Assembly (NCBI RefSeq): GCF_037042905.1
Contig: NC_087249.1
Location: 54,932,001-54,996,000 of the forward strand
Direction of reading: 5' to 3'
DNA: 64,000 nucleotides
Origin: Lytechinus pictus
Taxonomy: Eukaryota
How positions within the stretch are numbered: the stretch's first letter is position 1; each line of letters starts with the position of its first letter. Below are positions 14,901-56,900 of this stretch, piece after piece. The notes under the pieces were generated by a model. It saw only the letters and a list, made by a program, of their open reading frames with translations. It did not search any database and was not told where the DNA came from. The position numbers and the translations under genes were made by a program.

Positions 14901-17900
14901 GAATTACTATCATAACTTTGAAAATTTATGGATCTAGTCCATGGAACTTGGACATAAGGTTAATCAAGTATTAGTGAACATCCTGCCTGAGTTTCAGGTC
15001 ACATGACCAAGGTCAAAGGTCATTTAGGGTCAATGAACTTTGGCCAAGTTGGGGGTATTTGTTGAATTACCATCATAACTTTGAAAATGTATGGATTTAG
15101 TTCATGAAACTTGGACATTAGGTTAATCAAGTACCACTGAATATCCTGTGCGAGTTTCAGGTCACATGACCATGGTCAATGGTCATTTAAGGTCAATGAA
15201 CTTTGGCCGTGTTGGGGGTATATGTTAAATTACCATCCTAGCTCTGAAAGTTTATGGATCTAGTTCATAAAACTTGGACATGAGAGTAATCAAGTATCAC
15301 TGAACATCCTGTACGAGTTTCAGGTCACATGACCATGGTCAAAGGTCATTAAAGGTCAATGAACTTTGGCCGTGTTGGGGGTATTTGTTGAATTACCATC
15401 CTAACTGTGAAAGTTTATGGATCTAGTTCATAAAACTTGGGATATAAGAGTAATCAAGCATCACTGAACATCCCCTGTGAGTTTCAGGTCACAAAACCAA
15501 GTCAAAGGTCAGTTAAGGTCAATAAACTTAGGCCATGTTGGGGTAATTGTTGAAGTGCCATCATAACTTTGAAAGTTTATGGATAGAGTGAATGAAATGT
15601 GGACATGGGTGTAGTTGACAGTCTTAAGTCTCCGTTCAAATGTCATTTATGGTCAATGAACGTGGTATTATGTCATTATATGAATGATTATTTTATAGTA
15701 GTTTTCAAAGTTAGCACTGCTGCTATATTAAATTGCGTAATGCAGGCGAGACTGCCAGAGGCGTTCCACTTGTTTATTATTATTATTACCCCGGCTCTAG
15801 CTCGAGCTGCCTTTCAGCGCTCATGCATTCAAGGAATTACTCCTGCCGGGTACCCATTCACCTCACCTGGGTCGAGTGCAGCACAATGTGGATAAATTTC
15901 TTGCTGAAGGAAATTACGCCATGGCTGTAAAATGATTGTTCAATTTAACCCTTTAGCACCTGAACCGCCCGAGACCGCCCTTCCTATTACACACTGAACC
16001 GCCCTTAACCGCCCGTACGTTTTCTTTGCGCTATAGTATCTCTTGTCTATGATTTACCGTGGTAATATTGCGTGTGCATACCGTATAGGTTGGCTGCTAT
16101 AGAGATCTGCATAGAAAAGTGTATGCTCCTATTGAGTATAATAGAGAAAAACCGATTGACATGCATCGGTGTGTAGCAAGTTCCAGACTGTTGCGCAGTC
16201 GATCTCAGCAAAGATGGCTGCGTCCATGTCTCGGAAAACCACTTACTTCGCCGAAGAAGCTCGGGCGTTGCTATATGTTCATGAAAACGTTGGATATCAC
16301 ACAGAGTGACATCTAGATGTGAGTTCGAATTAATTTTTGACATATTTGATCCAAGATTTGGCGAAAACTTTAGTATTCTGTCAGTGATACTTTACATTTT
16401 TTTGAAGGCGTGGGACTGGGGCGGCTGAAACCCAAACTTTTGTTTTTTTTCTTCTCGCTCTGCAAATGATTGTCAAAGGTCAATATTCGTACATCTGATT
16501 GAACTTTGCCATGTACCATTCTATTCAACAGGTCCTATGCTACAAAATAAATATAACTTGTAATGAACAAAAGTAAATTTATAAAAAACTATTTCAATTT
16601 GTTTGGAACAATGCCTACTTATTACCAGTTTTATTGTTTCCTCCAGTGAGTAATTGCCATTATGCATAGGAATCTGTAGGTGCTATAGGGTTAATACATG
16701 TATCTATTGATGTTGTTCTTTCTTGATTATTTCAATTGATCCATGTACATTCTATGAAGATGAAACAAAATTTACTTTGATTACATTCCATAGTTTAAAT
16801 TCCTGTGTGTCTACAAGAAACAGACCTAAAGTTTGTGCTTTCACTTTTTACAATAGGTTGAAAGAAAAAAAAAACCTTAATCTCTTTTTTATCTTTTCAA
16901 ATGTTAATTATGACAAAAAGGTAGGAAAAGAAAATTAAGTCACAAGAAAAGCAAGTTCTGTGTTATTACATTTTGCATATTTAATTATATAAAATGCATG
17001 TGTGAATGTATGAATTAATGATATGCAAAATAAGTTTTATGAGAAATCTCATTCACCTCTTCAATTTGTGATAAGTTACATGTAGATACAGTCCAATGAA
17101 TGAATAATTGAATTGACATTTGATTTGTTTCTTTTCCCCAGCATTCACTACATTTTCTACATTTTGCAAGACGGCCCCAAACCCCCTTACTAGAGCAATA
17201 CCCACGGCTGAAAGCCAGACTGGTCTTGCATCAAGCACCACTCCTACATCTAGTAGGTCAGTCATCCTAAGTGCACCACCACATAATAAGACTTTGGTAA
17301 GGATCAGAGAGTTCCCACACAGCTGGCCCTCACCAAAGCGATTAAGACTAGACGAAGAGAGAGATGAATGTAACATGAAAAATGACACGAAGAGCAATCC
17401 TTTGCCTGTTGAGGAATGTGATGTAAAAATTCCAAAGTTAGCTCCTGTAGGAAGTGATGAAATGCCACCTCGTGCACAAGATCGGGTGTCTCTGGTCATT
17501 AACAATGCTGGGAATGGTCAAGAATGTGTAGATCTCCATGACAAATTTAATTCAACAGATCATGTATTGTTTACAGAAGTTCATGGTATGACTCAAAATG
17601 TTGGATTCTCGAGTGCTAGTGGGAGAGCCATATTTGTTTCCCCTGAATCCTTGAAGAAAGCTGAAAAACTCATTGGAGATGTAGACAAGGAAAAGCCACC
17701 GGAAGAATATCAACTGAATTTGTCATCAGCAGATTCTCAATGTGGGTTTCAGAGTGCCAGTGGGAAATCTATTCAAGTATCAGATGAGGCACTGAAAAAA
17801 GCTAAGAAAATCATTGATGAAGTGGGTTTGAATGATGAAACAATACACGATTCACCTGGTAAATCGTCACTGTCGGTAGGGTTTACTTCTGCACGTGGTA

Positions 17901-20900
17901 ATGCGATCAATATATCGGCAACTGCCATGGCGAAGGCAAGAAAGATAATGAATGACATTAACCATGATGAGGAATTGAAGACCATTGGGCAGGAAGGAAG
18001 AGTAGTAGAAATTTCTGGTCTTCACCATGTGGATGGAGGGGGAGATAGGAATATGATTCAGACTAAAGAAGGAGTGCAGAGTGGGGGCTTATCTGGAAAT
18101 GCTCAACTGAAAAGTACAGTGGAAAACAGGCAGCGTCACAAAGGATTCCGTCCCTTCAAACCACCATCTCTTGTTGCAAACATACAGCAACCATCTCATT
18201 TGACTTCAAGCATTCCATCCTTGAATCAGACTAGTGCAAATGAATTAATCAAAGAATCGGATAGAGGAAACGGTCTCAAGACGTGTGAAGACAGTATTCC
18301 TGTTGGATTGCAGGAGGGAAATGCAACAATGCCAGAGCTTGAGATCATCACCCTGCAACAAGAACAGAAGATAGAAACTACTAAAAGCAGTAACATGCCA
18401 AGAGAAAAACAGAAACTGGACAGTGGGAATTTACAACCTATTGAGAATAGTGACATTTCTGATGATGACTGTCTGTCTGCCACACAGGCTGCAAGAGAGA
18501 TCAAAGCTGCAGAGGAGATGGAACTTGTTTATAATTTCATGCAAGAAGAAGACACAGCATTCTCTCAGCTTGATGTGTCGTCAATCATAGCAGTTGGTCC
18601 TTCAGAGAAAGGAGCTGCACAGATTCTCAAATGTCCAGAATATCATACAGATCAAAATAGGGAGAGTCAAGTATCAAATTCTCGAGATCATCAGATGTTC
18701 AATCACACCATAGAGCCTACTCCATCGCAAGGCTTTCTTACTGAACAAAGTGGCAATTTCAGTCTCTTGGAAAGCAAGCTTCAAAGAGCCAAACCCATGG
18801 GGGCTGTCAAGCAAACCACTGATAGGAATGAAGTATTATCTACAACCATTAAGCACAATGATGTTCAATTTGAAACGATGGTTCAAAAAAGGATTGATGA
18901 ATCTAAACAATACATACCTTCTCCAAATCATGCAGAGAGAGTAACTTCAGACCTGAAGCAGAATGGAGATTACAGTAAAGTTGAGACCAATACTATTAAA
19001 GAATCACCTGATGTAGACCTGTCTGTGAAGATGATTGGACAGTTTATGGATGATAATTCCATCCTGACAAAGGAGACAGAGGGACTTTGTACCCTTAGTG
19101 TGAAGGACAAAGAGCAACAGGAGGTTAGTCACACTGATAGTCATGAACCATATCAAGGCACATGTAGTACTGATGTTACCGAAATCTCAAGCAATGCCCA
19201 GCAATCTAGTTATGTCCAAGATGTGGAATGTATTGAATCTTTATCTAATGATAAGGATAAAGCACATATTCCAGGTGATCACCTTCAACCGGACATACTA
19301 AATGCAACATCATACCAAGAGAATGACTCCATACCAGACCAGAAAAAGAGAGACAAACGTTGGTTGGAGATGGATGTCACATTAGAGGCTTGTGGCCCTG
19401 TTGGTTTCAAGATAGCTGGGGGACAAAAAATTGAGGTTTCAGAGGCAGCACTGAAGAAGGCTACTTTACTGCTCTCAGATCACAACTCAGATGGAGAAAG
19501 AAATAAGCAGCTCAATCCTGATATTTCCAATAAGTCTTTCAACCAGCTTATTCCAACTGTGTTAGCACATGATATGAGCATATCTCGTGCCACTCATCAC
19601 CAGGGAAATATGGAGCTATCTGAACATGTCAAAGTCCCAGAGTGCAGACCTCTGATTAATGTCTTACAGGGGGAAGAACTGCTGATTGATGATAACAATG
19701 GTGGCTCAACCATTAGAGAGAGTAGCATGTCTGAAGAAGAATCTGCTTCATCTTCTGTATCTGAAGTACGTCAGGCTGGTTTACAGACTGCAAGAGGCAA
19801 GGATAGCAAGGTATCAAAGTCAGCTCTGCAAATGGCAAAAACGGTTATTGGTGATAATCATGAAAATAATCCTGTGGACTATTCCATTGACTCCAAAGCT
19901 TCTAAAGACATTCCTGGCAGCGACCAAGATTTTGTCAACTTTGGTTTCCAGACAGCAGGAGGGAACAAAGTTTATGTTTCAAGTTCTGCACTTCAAAAGG
20001 CAAGGAAGGTTATTGATTCAGCTCTAGAAATCATACCTGAATGTTCTCCTGGAAGGTCCTCAACGATACATCAGAACACCATGGATTCCAAGACTACATC
20101 ATGTACTATGAACAAACATAACATCGTCCATTCAGAGCAGGCTCCACAGAAACATTCATCTCAAACTGGATTATCTCCCAAAGTTGCTGCTTTGGAGCCA
20201 GTTCTTTCAGAATACAATGATGTGTCTGATGTGTCTGGAAATTTGTCAAATACTGAAAGTGGTCTTCTGGTGGCTTTCCATACTGCAAGTGGAAACAAAA
20301 TCAGTATATCAGATGATGCCCTCCAAAAGGCAAGGAGACTGGTTTGCAATGAAATGACGAGCTTTCATGAAGGAGCTATTGAGAAATCTACTAAGGATTC
20401 CCATTCTAAACAAGTTGCGCTGATAGACACATTTGAAAATATCAGTGGAGACTGGGATGAAATTTCTGAAGCATTGCTAATTGGAGAGAGGCAACCAATT
20501 GCTAATGATACAGATTTGTGTAATAAAGGAAATACTGCTAACCAACACGGGGCAAGCGTTGCTAGAGATGTGAACTCCAATATACCATTCTCCAAATCTA
20601 GGCTTCAAAGGAAAAAGTATGGTGACTCGTATGGTAATTCGTTAGGCCAAAAGGGTTCAGAATTCATTACAAAGTCATCCCCAAGAAATGTAGGTTTCCA
20701 GACTGCAAGAGGAGGTGCAATATCTGTTTCAGATGAATCTTTGAAGAAGGCAAAACAGCTGTTAGGAGAGGATTCCGGACATGAAAATATCCAGGAAATA
20801 TCAGGCCTCAAAGAGACTATGTTTGAATCATCCGAATTAATGACTGGCTTTCAAACTGGTAGTGGAAAGCACATCCAAGTTTCAGAATCCGCAATCCAAG

Positions 20901-23900
20901 TAGGTAAGCAGCTATTATCAAATGATCTTGATATCTCCAATGGTGGTGCAACATCCTCTCTACACCAAAAACACCCGGATTCTGCTGAGTTGGAGGTTGG
21001 GTTTCAAACAGGAGGCAGGAGAAGGATTCAGGTTTCAGAATCATCCATATTGAAAGCAAGGCAGCTATTGTGTGATGAATCAAACCAAGATGTGATGGAA
21101 TTCAGTGGTCTGATAATGAAAGAAACGTCAGGACAATTTCAACTTGATTCTGCAAGATCCCCAGATATTCTTATAGGTGAAGAAAAGCAGAACAACACTT
21201 CAAAAGAATCATCAGTGCCCACTAACAGTAAAACTAGAGACCAACAAGTGCAGAGAGTTTCTCGCTCTCTTGAGAGCCAAAAATCTCATATTAAAAGTGT
21301 GCCAGTGGGCTTTCAAACGGGACATGGGAGAAAGGTACAGATTTCTGTGGCATCTCTTCAAAGAGCAAAGGAATTCTTAGCTGCTGGCTCTGATTCAATA
21401 CCAGATCAAAATATAGCTGTTGGCTTTCAAACGGGACATGGTAAGAAGGTCCAGGTTTCTGAAGCGTCTCTCCAAAGAGCAAAGAAATTCTTAGCAGATG
21501 AGTCCAGTGAAGTACCACATCAAAATATAGCTGTTGGCTTTCAAACGGGACATGGTAAGAAGGTCCAGGTTTCTGAAGTGTCTCACCAAAGAGCAAAGAA
21601 ATTCTTAGCTGATGAGTCCAGTGAAGTACCACATCAAAATATAGCTGTTGGTTTTCAAACGGGGCATGGTAAGAAGGTCCTGGTTTCTGAGGCATCTTTC
21701 CAAAGAGCAAAGAAATTCTTAGCGGATGAGTCCAGTGAAGTACCAGATCAAAACATAGCTGTTAGCTTTCAAACGGGACATGGAAAGAGGGCTCAGGTTT
21801 CTGAAGCATCTCTCCAAAGAGCAAAGAAATTCTTAGTGGATGAGTCCAATGAAGTCCCAGATCAAAACATAGACATTGGCTTTCAAACAGGACATGGCAA
21901 GAAGGTTCAGATCTCTGAGGTGTCTCTAAAAAAAGCAAAGAAATTCTTTGCAGATGAGGCCAGTAAAGAAACGGATCAAGACATAGCCATCGGCTTTCAA
22001 ACAGGACATGGTAAGAAGGTCAGGCTATCCAAGGCATCTCTTCAAAGAGTAAAGGAATTCTTAGCTGCTGGCTCTGATGCAGAACCAGATCGAAACATAG
22101 CTGTTGGCTTTCAAACAGGACATGGTAAGAAGGTCCAGGTTTCAGAGGCATCTCTCCAAAGAGCAAAGAAATTCTTAGCGGATGAGTCCAATGAAGTCCC
22201 AGATCAAAACATAGCTGTTGGCTTTCAAACGGGACATGGTAAGAAGGTCCAGGTTTCTGAAGCGTCTCTCCAAAGAGCAAAGAAATTCTTAGCGGATGAT
22301 TCCAATGAAGTACAAGATCAAAACATAGCCATTGGCTTTCAAACAGGACATGGAAAGAAGGTCCAGATTTCTGAGGCGTCTCTACAAAATGCAAAGAAAT
22401 TCTTCGCAGATGAGGCTAGTAAACAAACAGATCAAGACATATCCATCGGCTTTCAAACAGGACATGGTAAGACGGTCAAGCTATCTGAGGCATCTCTTCA
22501 AAGAGCAAAGGAACTCTTATCTGCTGGCTCTGATGCAGAACCAGATCAAAACATGGCTGTCGGCTTTCAAACAGGACATGGGAAGAAGGTCAAGGTTTCT
22601 GAGGCGTCTCTTCAAAGAGCAAAGACATTCTTAGCTGCTGGCTCTGATGTAGAACCAGTAAACTTGGCTGTCTGCTTTCAAACAGGACATGGGACGAAGG
22701 TTCAGGTTTCTGAGAAATCTCTTGAAAAAGCAAAGGAATTCTTAGCTGATGAGTCTATTGCATTATCAGATCAGAACACAACTGGTGGCTTACAAAAACG
22801 ATTTGAGAATAATGACCAGGTTTCTGAGGCAACCCTTCAAAGAACAAAACAGTTAATAGCTATGGAATCTGATGTAGGAACTGAAGTACATGTACATTCA
22901 AATGATTCTGCTGTTTGTGGTGACGTATGTGAAGAGTCACTCTCTGAGAAATCCTCCATGATGACAGGATTTATGACAGGGGATGGAAGAAAAGTTCAAG
23001 TCTCAGAGGCTTTGCTTCAACAAGCAAAGAATAATTTTGACTCCGAGGTATTTACAGATTTCAGCAGAGAAATTGGTAAAAGGGAATTACATGTACCTCC
23101 TGGGAGTCGGCACCAAAATCTTTCCTCCAGTGCTGATGGAAATTCACCGACCCACCAAAGGAAAGATTTAACAGAAGATCGGACATTGGAAAGAGAGCCT
23201 CTGAAAGGGGGTTGCAGTCTTACCAACTTACCACCACAGAAACATCTTCCTGGAGGGCTCACCAAGAGAGGCTTGGTAGACATGAGAAACAGACAGTGTA
23301 ACCAGCAGAGTAACAGGAGAGGTAGCCTCCCAACTGGACAAAAACCATACAAACGTAAGTAATGTCACTTGCATGATTTTTTCTTCATTTATTTATTCAG
23401 ATTAATGTTAAGGACATGTGCAGCCATCAAATTATTTACTAGCTTGTGCTTCTTCAAATGAATCATTAGTATGACTTGAAAATGAAGAATAAATATTAAC
23501 TTATTTCAATGTTATTTGTGGCTTTTCCCATTGGATATTGCTTCAAAAATAAGCATGTCTTACAGAGATAAAATAAAGATAAAATGGTTTTCAGAATACC
23601 ACTTTGCAGAGATTCTAAGGGTATTTTATCTCACTGATTTTAACAGACAAATTGTTTTATTTTATCTGAGATAAAATGGATCTCAAATACCATCCATATT
23701 TTTTTTTCTCCCTGGAGATACATGGAGCTCAAGTGTTAATTAGTATAATTAGCTTGAAACTGGTTATTATTTCCTCCATTTTCCAATCAATTCGCTTTAT
23801 GACCTGAAGCTGTGCCCTTCTCACTATGATAGTAATATTTGCTTGAAGCAATTTGAGATATTAGTATATTGTTTTTAATATTGAAAATGAGATTTTGTCT

Positions 23901-35900: not shown

Positions 35901-38900
35901 TCATGTCGGTCAGTTGAGTGAATTTTTAAATGACAGGATTAACGGGACCATTTTCATGGAACTCCCCTCTTCCCGACAAACAAAATCTACCGTAAGTACT
36001 TTTTAAAAAGCCAAAATAACGACAAAAAGCAGATTGTTGTTTTGATTGAAATACTGCTTTATACAGCATCTGCCTCCCATGTTTCCATTCAATTCAGTGA
36101 ATCTATAAAATTGTTTATGCTTTGAAATAGATTATTTGTGCAATGCACATCAACTGATTATTAAACTGAAACACAGAGGTACATGTAATAGAAATGATGG
36201 ACATATATCTGTAAAAATATTGTGATACTAACTGTCATGGAAGAAATAAAAAATGATGATGACCTAAAAATAGAAAGAGGGGTGGAATCCCCTCCCCCCT
36301 CCCATCTCATCTTTGTACAAAAATTGGTACACATTTCATCTCTAGAAAATTGTATGGTCAGTAACCTTTCAAAAAATCATATTTCGAAAGCTTGATTATG
36401 AATCAATTATGCTTTTTATACATCAAAGATACTCTCAATATGTGTAATTTCTGTAGAACAGACATTTTATTGTACATTCAATGTTTTATCCTCTGTTGAT
36501 TGGAAGCTTCCATGTACATGTATGTTCAAAAACAGTAGTAGACGAGATATAGAGGGAGAGAGGACACGAGAAAGACGGAGAAAAATAGACAATCATTATT
36601 TGACTTTGTATGTAATGAATAGAAGATATACATGATATCCTTTTTGAAGTTGATGTTTTTTTTCTTTATAATGACTGTAAATTCCCTACATGCTAATTCT
36701 TTCTTTTGTTTTGAGGGGGGTGCAATCATTAAGGGAAACCTCTCAAAATATTTACATCATGTCATTTTCCTTGCTTTTCTTTTTAGAATGTTAGCTTTCT
36801 GTGAATATAGAAGATAGACCCCCAAAAAATATTTGCCATCTCCAGTGTGATCGTTTTCAGCCTTATAGATTGCCCTCCTGCACGTCCCCCTAATGATAAT
36901 AGATTCACATTAAAATGTTTTCATGTTACAGGGTAGATTGATTAAGCCTGCATTGGGTAGCTTGTGGCGATGTAGAAAGGAAGAGGATCGCATCAGTCTG
37001 AAGGACTTTGTTAATCATCAATATCCCTGCTCTATGACAGACTCTCAGGTAAGAGAATCCAGGGGTTTCTCATAATTAACAGATCTTGGGGGTGTTTTTA
37101 CAGAGTTTAGTTTTTCAATTCAGTGTTTAACGTGTCTTAATTTGTTGTTTGATAAACATTTTGTTGGCTTACTTAGTGCTTCCTTTAATCATTTATTTGA
37201 TAAATGAAATTAACCATCGGCCCCCTAATAATGGATCAACCATGTAGATAACTTTCTTGGGCTGTGCAAGTCAAGTGTGCAGCCAGCTTGCTGTAATATA
37301 CACCTGTCTTATCTGTACCGTGCACAAAACAAGCAAAACAGATCAATCTGAATATTTGCATTTGATAAAGGCCTACAGATATCAAAATCATGATCATACA
37401 CAGTCTCCATTTCCAGAGGAAATTACTAGTCTATTTCCAAAAGTTCTTCCATTTCAGATCTGTTTCCGTAAACGTTTGTTTCTGAAAACATGTCTGTTTC
37501 TGTAAATGTTTGTTTCTTACAGCTGCCTTACCTATTTCTGTCAACGTTTTCTTTTTTAAAGCTTGTCCATTTCTGTAAATGTTTATTTCTGTAACCGTTT
37601 GTTTCTGGACAAATTGTTTGTCCTATCAGAATGAGTAAAAAATTAAGTTTTGGTGTAAATTTAAAAGTGGCCGTAGGAGAGTTACATATGATAAACCAAA
37701 TCTTGCTTGCTTTGCCAGTAGAAGGATCGCCATGGCATTAGTGATCTTGACATTCAAATGCTAATAAATGTCTTTGTTCAATTTTGCTCAAACTTTCAGA
37801 GATCTACATGTAATTCTTTGGTTTTTCTGCTTTTTTACTAGCTAACCTTTTTCAAGGGTTTCATGAACTCCTTTAAGCAGGATGTTTTTCTCTAGTTTTA
37901 TTATGGGCATTTTCACCACAGATGGACACAAAGGCAAAAAAATCAAGTTGATATTCATGTCAAATGCTTTGTTTTTTAATAATACAAGATCTGAAGTTTC
38001 TGGGACAAAACTTTTTCCGACTCTGGCAGCCATTTTTTATTTCAAAATGGCTGCCAAAGTATGGATACAAATTAGTGTTGAAAATAGTATATTGATACAT
38101 ATTTTATTTTGACAGATTTTTAAAGAACAGGGGGGCGTTTCATGAAAGGACTTGTCTGACGTTTTATCCGACAAGTCCCATTTTATCCGACAGTTACCAT
38201 AGTGACAGTACCTCTCAGCCAATCAACATCAGAGAAAGATGTCAGATCTGACAACTTGTCGGATGAAAATGTTGATGAAACACTCCCCAGGTTTCATCAT
38301 GATGTCTTCGCCTGTGATTTAGCTTGCTATTATAACACTTTATAAAATCCCATACAAAGAAACACCAGTAATAATAATAATAACTAGAATTTTAATTCGT
38401 CATGATGATGAATTAGGTGATCTGTCTCTGATTTTCATGATCACGAATACAATCACCATGTTTATTGAGATCAATACGATGATCATATTGAAAACTGAAT
38501 TTTTATTACGAAAAGAACATGTTGAATACTCTTGAAAAGAGTGAAATTGAGAAGTTATGAGAAATAGGTGTAGGTGATACACATGATACATGTTATGTTA
38601 AAAGGGTTTTTAAACTATTTTATTGTGCAATATTTTAACTTATACACCTTGAAATTGTCATAAAGGACCATTTGTGAAATGTTGAAAAGAAACAAATAAG
38701 GAAAAAAAATTTCTCATGTTCACCCCTGGCTTCGAACCGTGGACCCTAAGGACGCAAGTCTGATGCCTTACCAATCGAGCTGGACTGTTTCCCATAGACT
38801 ACACATAAGCAGAATAAGAGGATCTCAAATCCCATTTTGCAAGAGAAATATGGGCATGATCCCGGCATCTGATCGGAACATGGAGACCACATTTACGATA

Positions 38901-50900: not shown

Positions 50901-53900
50901 GGACCTAGTTCATGAAACTTGGACATAAGGTTAATCAAGTATTAGTGAACATCCTGCCTGAGTTTCAGGTCACATGACCAAGGTCAAAGGTCATTTAGGG
51001 TCAATGAACTTTGGCCAAGTTGGGGGTAGTTGTTGTATTACCATCATAACTTTGAAAATTTATGGATTTAGTTCATGAAACTTGGACATTAGGTTAATCA
51101 AGTACCACTGAATATCCTGTGCGAGTTTCAGGTCACATGACCATGGTCAATGGTCATTTAAGGTCAATGAACTTTGGCTGTGTTGGGGGTATATGTTAAA
51201 TTATTTTTATTTCGTTATTTGATTATACTTTTGTCTCCCCTCATTTTTGTCTCGCCTGCATAGCAGAGCGAGACTATAGGCGCCGCTTTTCCGACGGCGG
51301 CGGCGGCGGCGTCAACATCAAATCTTAACCTAAGGTTAAGTTTTTGAAATGACATCATAACTTAGAAAGTATATGGACCTAGTTCATGAAACTTGGGCAT
51401 AAGGTTAATCAAGTATTAGTGAACATCCTGCTCGAGTTTCAGGTCACGTGACCAAGGTCCAAGGTCATTAGGGTCAATGAACTTTGGTCAAGTTGGGGGT
51501 ATTTGTTGAATTACTATCATAACTTTAAAAATTTATGGATCTAGTCCATGAAACTTGGACATAAGGTTAATCAAGTATTAGTGAACATCCTGCCTGAGTT
51601 TCAGGTCACATGACCAAGGTCAAAGGTCATTTAGGGTCAATGAACTTTGGCCAAGTTGGGGGTATTTGTTGAATTACCATCATAACTTTGAAAATTTATG
51701 GATTTAGTTCATGAAACTTGGACATTAGGTTAATCAAGTACCACTGAATATCTTGAGCGAGTTTCAGGTCACATGACCATGGTCAATGGTCATTTGAGGT
51801 CAATGAACTTTGGCCGTGTTGGGGGTATATGTTAAATTACCATCCTAGCTCTGAAAGTTTATGGATCTAGTTCATAAAACTTGGACATAAGAGTAATCAA
51901 GTATCACTGAACATCCTGTACGAGTTTCAGGTCACATGACCATGGTCAAAGGTCATTAAAGTTCAATGAACTTTGGCCGTGTTGGGGGTATTTGTTGAAT
52001 TACCATCCTAACTTTGAAAGTTTATGGATAGAGTGAATGAAATGTGGACATGGGTGTAGTTGACAGTCTTAAGTCTCCGTTCAAATGTCATTTATGGTCA
52101 ATGAACGTGGTATTATGTCATTATATGAATGATATTTTTGTGAATGATTATTTTATAGTAGTTTTCAAAGTTAGCACTGCTGCTATATTAAATTGCGTAA
52201 TGTAGGCGAGACTGCCAGAGGCGTTCCACTTGTTTAATTTGTATCTTCATTTTATTGATAAAATAGGAATAATTGTAGACTTCAGTTAATTGTTATTTAA
52301 TCCTTTTTAAATATTCATTTTGTTTATTATAAAAGAGACATAAAATTTATGTAATTTTGATCAGATTTGTAAATTGCTAAAATGAGACTATGGTCCATGT
52401 TGCGTCAAAGATACATGTACTATTATGGCATGCTTTTGCATCCATTGATAACTAATGGTAACAATGCTCAACAGCCAATCAAAATCAAGGATACTAGTAA
52501 CAATTAGTAATAAGTAACATTCATGAAACAGGGTCTTGATGTGTCCTGTAGTGCATTGTATGTTTATACAGTACCGTTTCTGTATCTTTTCAGTGCTCTT
52601 CTTGACACCCCCGGTGTAGACCCCAAACTGTTGAAAGAAGACTGGGTCTATAATCATTACAAGTGGATCATCTGGAAAGCAGCTGCCATGGAAGTAGCTT
52701 ATCCTCTTCAGTTTGGTGGGAGGTAAGAATTCAGGCTACCTGCCTTACTCAATATTGATGTTATCAACTGATTGCAAGCTGTGGTCCATGGCTAACCATT
52801 TTCTACTCTTCTTCTTTTCTGTCATTTTTATGCCGCTGCCAAAAATATTTTAAAGGGGCTATAATCACCGTAATGTCGGTTGGGCGGGTGGTCCGTTGCA
52901 AATCTTGAGGTTCAAACTACTTCCTCAGTTTTTATCCGATTCTCATGAAGCTTGGAACACACTTGGGGTAAAGTTGTGTGAGACACATTTTTTGCATACA
53001 TGTGTCAGAAACTGTGTTGCCATGGTAATGGTATAGGGCTAGGGTATTAATCACCTTAGGTGATATTTATAGACAAATTCACCCATATCTGATTATTCAA
53101 ATTGTGGCCAAATGAACCTTAACAATAATAATAGGTGGGAAGCACAAATGAAAGTCTTAAAAGTTGTTGGCACTGACCAAATTTATTAGCTCTGAAAATC
53201 TCAGTGAATCCCTTTGATTTGATTGGCTGAGCACCACTTGTCCCTTCCTGTTACCATGGTAATTTTCAGTGCCTACAGACTTCATAAAAAGGGTGACAAA
53301 GGGAGAATACTTTGATTTGCTGTGACACAGAGGTGTCTGACTGTTGTTATGGTAACTGTCATATAAACAGACTTTCTAATAAGTCATCTGGAAAATCCTT
53401 TCATGAAACACTGCTGGGGTTGAATATACCAGATTAAGCATTTTTAGGTTGAATCATATATGTTAGAACTCTGATTTTAATATATTTTTCTCCTTTTTAT
53501 ATGCTTTTCTTCTTTTATTACAGACTATTGACACCAAATTGGGTGCTTCTTCAGTTAAAGTATCGGTATGATAGAGAGATAGATCACAGTCAACGCCCTG
53601 CTCTTAGGAAGATCTTAGAACGAGACGATGCAGCATCCAGGAGAATAGTCCTCTGTGTAGCAGCTATTAATCACACGGGATCATCAACACATCATCATGG
53701 GAAATCACCACAACAATTAAAGGTGATTCTAATGATTGGTTCACATGGATGCCACAGCCACTTAGAACAGTGTCATCTCAAAAACCTGTCCTGTTTCATA
53801 CAGACTTGTTATTATAAGAAATATTCAATTGCTGTTACAAATTTTATATCAAGCAATCAGATTGAAGGATTTCATTAGCATTTAACTATTATTGCAATTT

Positions 53901-56900
53901 TTTTATTATAACAAGTTTTGTTAAATGAGCCCATGAACTATTAAAGTGACATTGCAGGTCGAGGGTCTGTATGTTTGATCATTCAGCTCAAAACAAGAAT
54001 ACCAGTTCTTTGGTGCTTTATTAACAGACTATTCAATATCACTTTGAGACAGTTCTCTACATAATTCAAATTCACAATGAGAACTTTACTTTTTCTTTAA
54101 AAGATTTAGATATTGTGACTTAAAGAAAGTAATCTGAAAATTCTTTTGAATTGATTAGGAAAAGGAAATTGAATGTGTTTTAGTAATTCTTATTTTCTTT
54201 CCTGTTTTTCTTTAGAGTTCACAGCCCTTATCGCATCCTACTCTAGAGCTGACGGATGGATGGCACAGTATATCAACTATCATAGACCCACCCCTAGCAA
54301 ACTATGTAAGGTCTGGAAAGATCTTATGTGGTACCAAGCTGTGTATATATGGAGCAGAGTTGATTGGATCTCAAGATGCTTGTTCTCCTCTTGAGGTTGG
54401 TACTGTAATTCAACTTTTATTTCTAGATTTTCCTACTTTTAGACAATTTATATGCAAAATGTTCAGGATCTCTTTGCTTAGCCTCATTCTAAGAAACTAA
54501 CTGGTAACGCTGCCTTGAATGATAATAACGCTGAATAGATTGAAAGTTAACGTAGTAATTACCATTGAAACCAAAGTTATTGTTGATGGGAAGTTTTATG
54601 AAATGGCACCTAGAAATGAATATCCATTTACATTAGCTCCTCTCCCCTTGGATTAGTATAATGAGACAGTCTCTACATTGTATATATACCACATTGACTT
54701 GCTCGAATACTCCCCAATTAGTAGAAATATATTCACCAAGTAATGAACAGGGTTATCTCTTTTTTAGGTGCTTGGCAAGTTTTTCTCATTCTTGGACTGT
54801 ATACATATCATTACTTCCACTGTATTAGTACAGATGAACCTCCCCTTCTCACTCTCTTGCTATCTACTTTACTTCATATAATGTAGTTTGAGCTGAGCCT
54901 TTGAAAGGTTAATGGCCTCTGCTGGCTCCCCCCACATTATTTTTATTAATTACTTATTTTCTTTAATGTATATTTCTGTAAATGTAATCATTTATTATCA
55001 AATTGGAAATAAAGAAAATAATTCCTCGAAAATCATGCACATTTTGATTCTAGATTCCAGAAAGTCTGAAACTGAAGATAGCGGCCAATTCTACCAGACG
55101 TGCACGCTTTGATGCAAGACTTGGTCTCCAATGTGACCCCCGACCTTTCCCCCTCCCTACGACCTCTCTGCATCCTGATGGTGGTAGTGTAGGGTGTATA
55201 GATGTTCTCATCCTTAGGACATACCCCATGCAGGTAAGATTGATATTGTATTGCATGGCTCAGAATGGGATACCAGAAATATTCCCCAAGTTAGGAATTA
55301 TTACACAAAATGTAGATGAGTGCAATATTGGCATTACAAATCAAATATTTAATCTTTATAGTAAAAGCCATCCAATATATTTATTATTTCAAGTTTTCTT
55401 AATGATCATTTTCCATTAGACTTTATAATACGGCATGATATTGCAAAGCAAGTTTTGTACATTCACATTTCGGTGCTATGTGTAATATGATCTGATATTG
55501 CACAGTACAGACGAATTATGAAGACTGAAATGTTATCGAAATCAGACGTAAAATAAGAAGTTACAATATTTAAGAAATTTTGCGTATTTTCCACAACAGT
55601 GTATTCTGTAATATAAGGATGTATTGTAATCTAATGTTTAGTTCATGGAGAAACTCCCAGAGGGGGAAGTGTGTTCAGTATACTGTAATGATGGTATAAT
55701 AATGTTTGTTTCTTAATGTTTAGTTCATGGAGAAACCCATAGAGGGGGGAAGTGTGTTCCGCATACTATAATGATGGTATAATAATGTTTAGTTCATGGA
55801 GAAACTCCCAGAGGGGGGGGGGAGTGTGTTCCGAATACTTTAATGATGGTATAATAATGTTTAGTTCATGGAGAAACTCCCAGAGGGGGGGAAGTGTATT
55901 CCGCATACTGTAATGATGGTATAATAATGTTTAGTTCATGGAGAAATTCCCAGAGGGGGGAAGTGTGTCCAGTATACTGTAATGATGGTATAATAATGTT
56001 TGTACGTTAATGTTTAGTTCATGGAGAAACTCCCAGAGGGGGGAAGTGTGTTCCGAATACTGTAATGATGGTATAATAATGTTTAGTTCATGGAGAAACT
56101 CCCAGAGGGGGGAAGTGTGTCCAGTATACTGTAATGATGGTATAATAATGTTTGTACGTTAATGTTTAGTTCATGGAGAAACTCCCAGAGGGGGGGAAGT
56201 GTGTTCCGAATACTTTAATGATGGTATAATAATGTTTAGTTCATGGAGAAACTCCCAGAGGGGGGGAAGTGTGTTCCGCATACTTTAATGATGGTATAAT
56301 AATGTTTAGTTCATGGAGAAATTCCCAGAGGGGGGAAGTGTGTCCAGTATACTGTAATGATGGTATAATAATGTTTGTACGTTAATGTTTAGTTCATGGA
56401 GAAACTCCCAGAGGGGGGAAGTGTGTTCCGTAATGCCAAGGAAGAAGCTAAAGCTGCTACTCTTCATGCCAGTCAGAAACAAAACAAGATGGAGCAACTC
56501 TTTACACAGGTCCAGAAGCAGTTTGAAGCAAAGCAATCTCATAAAGGTATTCAATTCTATCAGTTCTGGGTGAAATCAGATGTCTGTGGCTAATAATAAT
56601 TATTATACCGACATGCTTATACAGCGCATATCACTGCCAAATGCGTCCCTGTGCACTCTTTGAAGAAGACAGAAAAAGCAAAGAAAAGAGAGAAATTTGC
56701 TGGCGATCGTGGCACTAACTCATTTGAAATTCTTTTTGAATAAGTATGTTTTCAAAGTGGATTTAAACTTGGGTGTAGAAGAGTTCTTTGCATATGAGGG
56801 GATGGTATTCCAAAGTGAAAAGGCATTATGTATTTCTGTAGAAATATTATCACTCATGAAGAAAGCAGACTTCCTTGTTTATGCTACATTTGAAAAATGG

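What the first reader, a model, noticed from the sequence alone, without database searches (positions are those of the whole stretch)
20843..23050. Sharp switch from FxxA to FxxG BRC repeats: two spatially segregated repeat classes
Seen: repeats 1-8 keep the Ala (FSSA, FQSA, FTSA, FKIA, LQTA, FQTA, FHTA, FQTA), while the 16 intact later ones have Gly (FQTGSG, FQTGGR, 13 x FQTGHG, FMTGDG). Established: Phe and Ala of FxxA fill the two RAD51 oligomerisation-interface pockets, and human BRC1-4 and BRC5-8 differ in function. Inference: the amplified class may be low-affinity/high-avidity, filament-stabilising, or DMC1-preferring. Gly does not necessarily abolish binding.
Basis: partly seen in the sequence, partly recalled or inferred. 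Interest (0 to 1): 0.75.

Follow-up and report, generated by a model that had tools for sequence, protein, structure and literature searches.

The report
Sea urchin BRCA2: glycine-type RAD51-binding repeats
In the sea urchin Lytechinus pictus, the DNA-repair protein BRCA2 carries 8 ordinary RAD51-binding repeats followed by 16 in which a key alanine is glycine; this layout is shared by all sea urchins examined, so it is an old, maintained variant of a known motif, not a new kind of system.

Summary
The window holds the BRCA2 gene of Lytechinus pictus. Its giant exon (17141-23353, + strand) encodes 25 BRC repeats in this order: 8 with Ala (FSSA ... FQTA), then FQTGSG, FQTGGR, 13 tandem FQTGHG units of 114 bp, one decayed unit, and FMTGDG.

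The Ala-then-Gly order is not peculiar to this species. It recurs in L. variegatus, Strongylocentrotus purpuratus and two Diadema species, and is absent from starfish. The three dispersed Gly repeats pair one-to-one between genera, while the array changes copy number (6-14 units) and its units group by genus.

Within the array, FQTGHG shows at least 5 synonymous and 0 amino-acid changes, against 22 and 59 in the rest of the unit. Stranded RNA reads cover the array without splicing.

RAD51 and DMC1 of this genome keep their own FTTA motif, and the listed Ala-pocket residues are unchanged in RAD51 and, where readable, in DMC1. There is no compensatory change.

FxxG repeats are already known from rice, Leishmania, fungi and tetrapod BRC5, and peptide data show 3-6-fold weaker binding. 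Hydractinia BRCA2 is all-Gly.

My reading is that these are working RAD51-binding modules with a weakened first anchor, amplified into a multivalent block. A separate function for the Gly class is untested.

The parts
17141..23353 (+). Giant BRC-repeat exon of the L. pictus BRCA2 orthologue (2071 codons)
   Evidence: tblastn of P0001 on the window; Pfam PF00634 at 719.6 bits; P0001 is 100% identical
17606..20773 (+). Block of 8 Ala-type BRC repeats (FSSA 17606, FQSA 17747, FTSA 17882, FKIA 19406, LQTA 19781, FQTA 19946, FHTA 20276, FQTA 20696), dispersed among unique sequence
   Evidence: HMM scan; each pairs with an S. purpuratus orthologue
18143..18166 (+). FxPP-type motif GFRPFKPP between BRC3 and BRC4, conserved in four other urchins
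   Evidence: Regex scan of the orthologues
20849..20926 (+). First Gly-type repeat, [26 protein letters not shown] (BRC9)
   Evidence: orthologous to S. purpuratus repeat 11, also Gly
21002..21079 (+). Second Gly-type repeat, [26 protein letters not shown] (BRC10)
   Evidence: orthologous to S. purpuratus repeat 12, also Gly
21311..22789 (+). Tandem array of 13 FQTGHG units (114 bp = 38 aa each; unit 12 is 111 bp). Linker types give a higher-order pattern A-BBBB-C / A-BB-C / A-A-B'
   Evidence: Tandem Repeats Finder; unit table, identity matrix and dN/dS; RNA coverage without joints
22790..22867 (+). Decayed unit ([26 protein letters not shown]) that has lost the FxxG module
   Evidence: HMM score of only 9.4 bits. 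Its C-terminal half matches the last L. variegatus array unit
22970..23047 (+). Last repeat, [26 protein letters not shown] (Gly type)
   Evidence: orthologous to FMTG[DE]G in L. variegatus and S. purpuratus, SH-aLRT support 98
53597..54404 (+). Two exons of the BRCA2 OB1 DNA-binding fold (53597-53722 and 54225-54404). They show that the BRC exon belongs to a full BRCA2 gene
   Evidence: the genome search with PF09103 on the window's own genome

Best explanation
The stretch encodes the C-terminal two-thirds of the RAD51-binding region of sea urchin BRCA2. Each 26-30-residue repeat most likely binds one RAD51 protomer the way human BRC4 does. The Phe of FxxG would enter the oligomerisation pocket, the TGHG hairpin would pack on the ATPase core, and the FL/FF-x-D module would fill the second pocket. 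With Gly, the small Ala pocket stays empty, so each unit should bind several-fold more weakly than an Ala repeat.

The Gly state is old. An early echinoid already had FQTG repeats behind its FQTA repeats, spaced about 51-55 aa apart. That spacing survives as the Diadema array and as BRC8-10 of Lytechinus and Strongylocentrotus. In the lineage leading to those two genera, one Gly unit was then amplified into a 38-aa tandem array. The array has since gained and lost units by unequal crossing-over, and its units group by genus rather than by position.

Purifying selection keeps FQTGHG intact. The result is a protein with a few stronger Ala sites followed by a dense multivalent run of weaker Gly sites, which should raise RAD51-carrying capacity.

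Shown here: the anatomy, the conservation, the selection, transcription, and the unchanged recombinase pockets. Inferred: binding itself, the weaker affinity, and the avidity or capacity role.
For: - Family membership: Pfam BRC scores are highest in the Gly units, with the best stretch at ORF residues 1433-1460. The gene has BRCA2 helical and OB1 domains downstream.
- Conservation: the Ala-then-Gly order holds in L. variegatus (8 then 9), S. purpuratus (10 then 17), P0023 (10 then 15) and two Diadema species (6 then 11, with one FQTA inside the Gly run). Starfish are all Ala. The dispersed Gly repeats pair one-to-one between Lytechinus and Strongylocentrotus.
- Selection: units are 71-96% identical with mean pairwise dS 0.41. 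dN/dS is 0.28 in the core and 0.69 in the linker. FQTGHG has at least 5 synonymous and 0 replacement changes, against 22 and 59 elsewhere (Fisher p = 0.002).
- Expression: stranded RNA reads cover 27 and 25 of 30 bins, all on one strand, with no joints.
- Recombinase side: RAD51 residues F166, P168, L171, L186 and V189 are identical to human. M158L, Y205L and M251T are general non-vertebrate states shared with starfish. RAD51 and DMC1 both carry FTTA.
- Literature: FHTG binds with Kd 1590 uM against 280 uM for FHTA, and the FHTG complex is solved (5fov; PMC4855620). An FxxG mutant of Leishmania BRC1 is 3-fold weaker (PMC9162458). In BRC2, the His that replaces Ser after the Ala keeps the hydrogen bond to RAD51 D187 in simulation (bioRxiv 10.1101/2025.11.13.688182).
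- All-Gly BRC regions occur in Hydractinia and in P0029.
- Array turnover: 13, 6, 14 and 12 units in four proteins, and units group by genus.
Against:
- The affinity loss is extrapolated from human, archaeal and Leishmania peptides. In Leishmania BRC2, changing G to A gave no gain (PMC9162458).
- Concerted evolution can hold a neutral state across an array, so the 13 units are not 13 independent votes for Gly.
- One Diadema unit inside the Gly run is FQTA in both species, so Ala is tolerated there.
- Whether adjacent 38-aa units can each hold a RAD51 protomer at the same time is unknown.
- The pocket residue list is from my memory of the 1N0W structure, not from a tool.
Confidence: 0.55

Rival explanations
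1. Founder effect with no functional meaning. Gly and Ala are interchangeable at this position. The block exists only because the units that happened to be duplicated carried Gly, and gene conversion within the arrays keeps them alike.
For: 13 of the 16 Gly repeats are one amplified unit with higher-order duplications. Units group by genus, as expected under homogenisation. Diadema tolerates an FQTA unit inside its Gly array. G-to-A in Leishmania BRC2 changed nothing (PMC9162458). Scattered single FxxG repeats occur in many animals.
Against: Three dispersed, non-array repeats keep Gly as orthologues in both genera. Two arrays with different periods (38 aa in Lytechinus and Strongylocentrotus, about 55 aa in Diadema) are both Gly. 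No Gly appears in any of the 6-10 N-terminal repeats of five urchin proteins, and only one Ala appears among about 77 C-terminal ones, although GGN to GCN is a single base change and units differ by dS of about 0.4.
Confidence: 0.25
2. A functionally distinct class. The Gly repeats would bind the RAD51-ssDNA filament, DMC1 or RAD51 paralogues rather than free RAD51, like human BRC5-8. They might even be homologous to tetrapod BRC5.
For: Tetrapod BRC5 is FxTG in almost every species in the hit list, and FYTGHG in most mammals. BRC5 is the best tetrapod match to the array units in four of five species compared, even with column 4 masked. Human BRC5-8 are reported to promote rather than block RAD51-DNA binding (cited in bioRxiv 10.1101/2025.11.13.688182). 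The segregation is conserved.
Against: The BRC5 resemblance rests mostly on the single shared His, which contributes 8 of the roughly 7-point lead. Human BRC6-8 are FxxA, so Gly does not define that class. The listed Ala-pocket residues are the same in L. pictus RAD51 and DMC1, so far as the DMC1 exons can be read, and both carry FTTA. Hydractinia BRCA2 has only Gly repeats. A conserved FxPP motif is available for filament binding.
Confidence: 0.15
3. The array is a neutral, non-binding coding expansion, or an assembly or annotation artefact.
For: Tandem repeats can expand neutrally and are prone to mis-assembly. One unit has already decayed (22790-22867).
Against: The frame is open across all 13 units, core dN/dS is 0.28 and the motif has no replacements. 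The array is present in three other urchin proteins from separate assemblies. RNA reads and contigs from other studies match with no indels or joints.
Confidence: 0.03

Closest known systems
Human BRCA2 BRC repeats (BRC4-RAD51 complex, PDB 1N0W; Pfam PF00634)
   Same: Same family and same gene. The repeats share the F-x-T-x-x-G-K hairpin, the conserved Ser positions and a second hydrophobic-hydrophobic-x-acidic module. They sit in the large central exon of a BRCA2 that has helical and OB domains.
   Different: Ala1527 is replaced by Gly in 16 of 24 intact repeats. There are 24 repeats rather than 8. 13 of them lie head-to-tail with only about 12 residues of linker.
Tetrapod BRC5 (FYTGHGRK in most mammals; FYTS in human)
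   Same: A conserved FxTG(H)G repeat that lies behind FxxA repeats. It also has an aromatic-Leu second module (WL against FL).
   Different: It is a single repeat, followed by three FxxA repeats. The similarity beyond Gly and His is not distinctive, so homology is not shown.
Trypanosoma brucei BRCA2 BRC expansion (PMC2408642, PMC3553974)
   Same: A lineage-specific tandem amplification of BRC units. There, repeat number affects recombination and RAD51 focus dynamics.
   Different: The T. brucei expansion is described as recent. The urchin units have diverged (71-96% identical) and form a second class beside older dispersed repeats. (That the T. brucei units are near-identical FxxA repeats is my recollection, not checked here.)
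FxxG BRC repeats of rice, fungi and Leishmania BRC2 (PMC12611145, PMC10684384, PMC9162458); archaeal RadA with Gly in the self-association motif (PMC4855620)
   Same: Gly at the Ala position of an otherwise normal RAD51-binding motif.
   Different: In those cases Gly is scattered or universal. It is not arranged as a conserved Ala block followed by a Gly block within one protein.
Drosophila yakuba BRCA2 BRC-array turnover (PMC2882388)
   Same: Serial gain and loss of BRC units by slippage or unequal exchange among close relatives.
   Different: I saw only the title and abstract; they do not mention an FxxA/FxxG split. The relative size of that array was not checked.

Membership tests
BRC repeat (Pfam PF00634) of BRCA2 | Significant match to the BRC profile | tested here: met
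   719.6 bits against a cut-off of 20.3, over 21 stretches; the best stretch lies in a Gly unit. 25 units by own HMM.
BRC repeat (Pfam PF00634) of BRCA2 | FxxA module: Phe at position 1 | tested here: met
   Phe in 23 of 24 intact repeats and Leu in one (LQTA).
BRC repeat (Pfam PF00634) of BRCA2 | FxxA module: Ala at position 4 | tested here: not met
   Gly in 16 of 24 intact repeats. Gly at this site is a documented natural variant (PMC4855620, PMC9162458, PMC12611145), so this narrows the subtype rather than excluding the family.
BRC repeat (Pfam PF00634) of BRCA2 | Second module: hydrophobic-hydrophobic-x-[DEQ], about 21 residues after the Phe | tested here: met
   FL-A-D, FF-A-D or LL-x-x in the array units, at positions 22-25. 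The consensus is quoted from PMC10684384.
BRC repeat (Pfam PF00634) of BRCA2 | Host protein is BRCA2 (helical domain and OB folds) | tested here: met
   OB1 exons lie at window 53597-54404. The helical domain starts at the end of P0001. Orthologues P0021 and P0022 carry the full set of domains.
BRC repeat (Pfam PF00634) of BRCA2 | Direct binding to RAD51 at the oligomerisation interface | not testable with these tools
No biochemical assay is available.
Two functional BRC classes (human BRC1-4 against BRC5-8) | One class binds free RAD51 tightly; the other binds and stabilises the RAD51-ssDNA filament | not testable with these tools
   Only sequence classes can be seen here. The Gly/Ala split does not map onto the human classes, since BRC6-8 are FxxA.
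Lineage-specific tandem BRC expansion (T. brucei type) | Head-to-tail units with copy number differing among relatives | tested here: met
   Period 114 bp with 13.5 copies. 13, 6, 14 and 12 units in L. pictus, L. variegatus, S. purpuratus and P0023.

The most novel reading that the evidence does not exclude
Sea urchins have evolved, and kept throughout their sampled diversity, a dedicated second class of BRC repeat: weak-anchor FxxG units amplified into dense arrays. This class would do something the FxxA repeats do not, such as holding a large exchangeable pool of RAD51 or binding the assembled filament. It may share ancestry with tetrapod BRC5, which would make a two-class BRC organisation ancient in deuterostomes.
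Probability: 0.15. Interest if true: 0.7.

Novelty: new variant of a known kind. Interest (0 to 1): 0.45.

Why it matters
How the number and affinity of BRC repeats tune RAD51 loading is still unclear, even for human BRCA2, where the role of BRC5-8 remains unsettled. Sea urchins offer a natural series. They have a fixed set of Ala repeats and a Gly block that varies from 9 to 17 repeats between species, while RAD51 is nearly invariant: 1 difference between the two Lytechinus species and 7 against S. purpuratus. To my knowledge (not checked here), L. pictus can be bred and edited in the laboratory. If so, the effect of the single methyl group and of repeat valency could be measured both in vitro and in vivo. 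I found no paper in the searched library that describes this layout. S. purpuratus BRCA2 appears there only as a row in alignments.

Tried and rejected
- Complex prediction. I asked complex prediction for array unit 8 (window 22088-22207) with the RAD51 core. There is no verdict, and I did not try further.
- Getting RAD51. The representative search with one RAD51 exon returned mostly fragments and vertebrate-type proteins. A profile mixing one fish RAD51 with L. pictus exon peptides then brought the urchin RAD51 proteins to the top.
- Compensatory change in the recombinase: rejected. No listed FxxA-pocket residue is echinoid-specific.
- Assembly artefact: rejected.
- Homology of the array to tetrapod BRC5: not supported beyond the shared Gly and His.
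- Gly repeats as a single clade. A tree of 98 repeats built without column 4 is too poorly resolved to decide. It needs 8 label changes against 32 expected by chance, and a single origin is not excluded.
- Identity of the all-Gly protein P0029. The contig look-up gave no organism.
- SNPs seen in the RNA reads could be mis-placed reads from sister units, so I did not use them as evidence.
Full report
**What is there.** The window is G000:C5:54932001-54996000 of Lytechinus pictus. A 2080-codon open frame at 17120-23362 on the + strand is the giant exon (17141-23353) of a gene whose other exons lie between 2847 and 37072. BRCA2 OB1-fold exons follow at 53597-54404. The public model P0001 (3071 aa, named 'uncharacterized protein') stops just inside the helical domain. 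The L. variegatus and S. purpuratus orthologues carry the full BRCA2 domain set. This is therefore the BRCA2 orthologue.

**The observation.** Pfam's BRC profile scores 719.6 bits. An HMM built from the repeats finds 25 units in this order:
- eight Ala units: FSSA, FQSA, FTSA, FKIA, LQTA, FQTA, FHTA, FQTA;
- then FQTGSG and FQTGGR;
- thirteen FQTGHG units;
- a decayed unit (LQKR...);
- and FMTGDG.

The thirteen FQTGHG units form a 114-bp tandem array at 21311-22789 (Tandem Repeats Finder gives 13.5 copies and 82% matches). Perfect segregation has a naive chance of 2.7e-6. If the array is counted as one event, the chance is 0.004.

**The array.** Units are 71-96% identical in DNA. Their linkers fall into three types that give the pattern A-BBBB-C / A-BB-C / A-A-B', which indicates duplication of multi-unit blocks. 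Mean pairwise dS is 0.41. dN/dS is 0.28 for residues 1-25, the part that would contact RAD51, and 0.69 for the 13-residue linker.

The hexapeptide FQTGHG is invariant in all 13 units. It nevertheless carries at least five synonymous changes: Thr is ACG or ACA, Gly4 is GGA or GGG, and Gly6 uses four codons. The rest of the unit shows 22 synonymous and 59 replacement changes (Fisher p = 0.002). Ser12, Ser15 and Lys20 are also invariant. Positions 22-25 read FL/FF-x-D, which matches the second binding module of BRC repeats.

Stranded RNA reads from two runs cover 27 and 25 of 30 bins across 20700-23200. All lie on one strand, with no joints or indels. The array is therefore transcribed as part of the exon.

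**Comparison with relatives.**

| Species or protein | BRC repeat layout |
|---|---|
| L. variegatus | 8 N-terminal repeats (one now FKTV), then 9 Gly |
| S. purpuratus | 10 Ala, then 17 Gly |
| P0023 (near-identical to S. purpuratus) | 10 Ala, then 15 Gly |
| Diadema setosum, D. antillarum | 6 Ala, then 11 repeats at about 55-aa spacing: 10 Gly and one FQTA |
| Two starfish | all Ala |
| Acorn worm | 2 Gly of 14 |
| Amphioxus | 0-3 Gly of about 18-30, most often one |

- With column 4 left out of the tree, the dispersed repeats pair one-to-one between Lytechinus and Strongylocentrotus. This includes the three dispersed Gly repeats.
- Array units group by genus, apart from the terminal unit. 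Array length is 13, 6, 14 and 12 units in the four proteins. This means unequal exchange and either homogenisation or repeated turnover.
- BRC8-BRC10 of Lytechinus and Strongylocentrotus are spaced 51-55 aa apart, like the Diadema array. The 38-aa array therefore looks like a later amplification of one Gly unit within an older Gly run. This last step is inference.

**The recombinase side.** RAD51 (contig C7) and DMC1 (contig C10) were found in the same genome, and their exons were read.
- Both carry FTTA as their own oligomerisation motif.
- Aligned to human RAD51, residues 146-258 differ at 16 positions.
- None of F166, P168, L171, L186 and V189 is changed. These residues line the Ala pocket according to my memory of structure 1N0W.
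- The changes M158L, Y205L and M251T are shared with starfish, brittle star, crinoid and acorn worms. They therefore do not track the Gly block.
- The only echinoid-specific changes in the core are E176D and F/Y195H.
- The DMC1 pocket residues that can be read from the exons are the same.

There is no compensatory change, and the pocket offers no basis for a DMC1 preference.

**What is already known.**
- FHTG binds a humanised RadA about 6-fold more weakly than FHTA, and the FHTG complex is solved. Some archaeal RadA proteins carry Gly in their self-association motif (PMC4855620).
- In Leishmania, A-to-G in BRC1 costs 3-fold, while G-to-A in BRC2 gains nothing (PMC9162458).
- Rice BRC repeats are mostly FxxG (PMC12611145), and fungi have both forms (PMC10684384).
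- In my own hit list, tetrapod BRC5 is FxTG almost everywhere, and FYTGHG in most mammals.
- Hydractinia BRCA2 and the unnamed protein P0029 have only Gly repeats.
- Tandem BRC expansions are known in T. brucei (PMC2408642, PMC3553974) and D. yakuba (PMC2882388).
- I found no paper in the library that describes the urchin layout.

**Reading.** The Gly repeats are most likely working RAD51-binding modules whose first anchor is weakened by loss of one methyl group. They are kept by selection and amplified into a dense multivalent block behind a set of stronger Ala repeats.
- The main rival is that Gly is a neutral founder state maintained by concerted evolution.
- That a separate function exists (filament, DMC1 or paralogue binding) is possible. 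The only support is the conserved segregation and a thin resemblance to BRC5 that rests mainly on the shared His.
- A conserved FxPP motif at 18143-18166 is a more conventional candidate for filament binding.

**Verdict.** This is a new variant of a known kind, of moderate interest.

Noticed in passing
window 18143-18166: An FxPP-type motif (GFRPFKPP) lies between BRC3 and BRC4. It is conserved in L. variegatus, S. purpuratus and Diadema. No second F.PP motif occurs near the C-terminus of the full-length urchin proteins, unlike mammals, which have FVPP after BRC8 and FQPP near the C-terminus.
   Followed up: partly
window 36932-37072 and 53597-54404: The public gene model P0001 (3071 aa, 'uncharacterized protein') ends inside the BRCA2 helical domain, although OB-fold exons lie about 17 kb further on. 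The model is probably truncated or split.
   Followed up: partly
G000:C7:40112000-40127000 (L011, L014), RAD51: Echinoid RAD51 has only two core changes not seen in 12 other animals: E176D and F/Y195H. Residue 195 follows the strand that carries pocket residues V189, A190 and A192. Whether it touches the Ala pocket was not checked.
   Followed up: no
P0058-P0080 (tetrapod BRCA2 proteins): BRC5 is FxTG in nearly all tetrapods listed, and FYTGHG in most mammals. The human FYTS form (recalled, and described as FxxS in bioRxiv 10.1101/2024.10.10.617680) would then be the exception rather than the rule.
   Followed up: partly
P0030 (Hydractinia) and P0029 (unnamed ENA protein): In both, every BRC repeat is Gly type: 10 FQTGLG units at a 40-aa period in Hydractinia, and 15 units, many FQTGHG, at about a 46-aa period in P0029. 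P0070 and P0079 show another Ala-then-Gly order in unknown organisms.
   Followed up: partly
window 22676-22867 compared with P0021:2417-2454: The last array unit of L. variegatus reads like the N-terminal half of L. pictus unit 13 joined to the C-terminal half of the decayed L. pictus unit. This is the footprint of an unequal crossover one unit out of register.
   Followed up: no
window 21585, 22050, 22235, 22494: RNA reads carry variants in array units. Two restore the unit consensus (His16 to Leu in unit 3, Val19 to Ala in unit 7). One changes the motif His to Asn in unit 9, seen in 3 reads of one run. These may be alleles or reads mis-placed from sister units.
   Followed up: no
P0024 (Macrosteles), P0002 (Dryococelus), P0027 (Branchiostoma floridae): Other animals have large tandem BRC arrays made of Ala-type units: about 20 units of 33 aa in a leafhopper, 14 units in a two-unit higher-order repeat in a stick insect, and 8 units of 55 aa in amphioxus. 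In the leafhopper and in B. floridae the repeat closing the run is Gly type.
   Followed up: no
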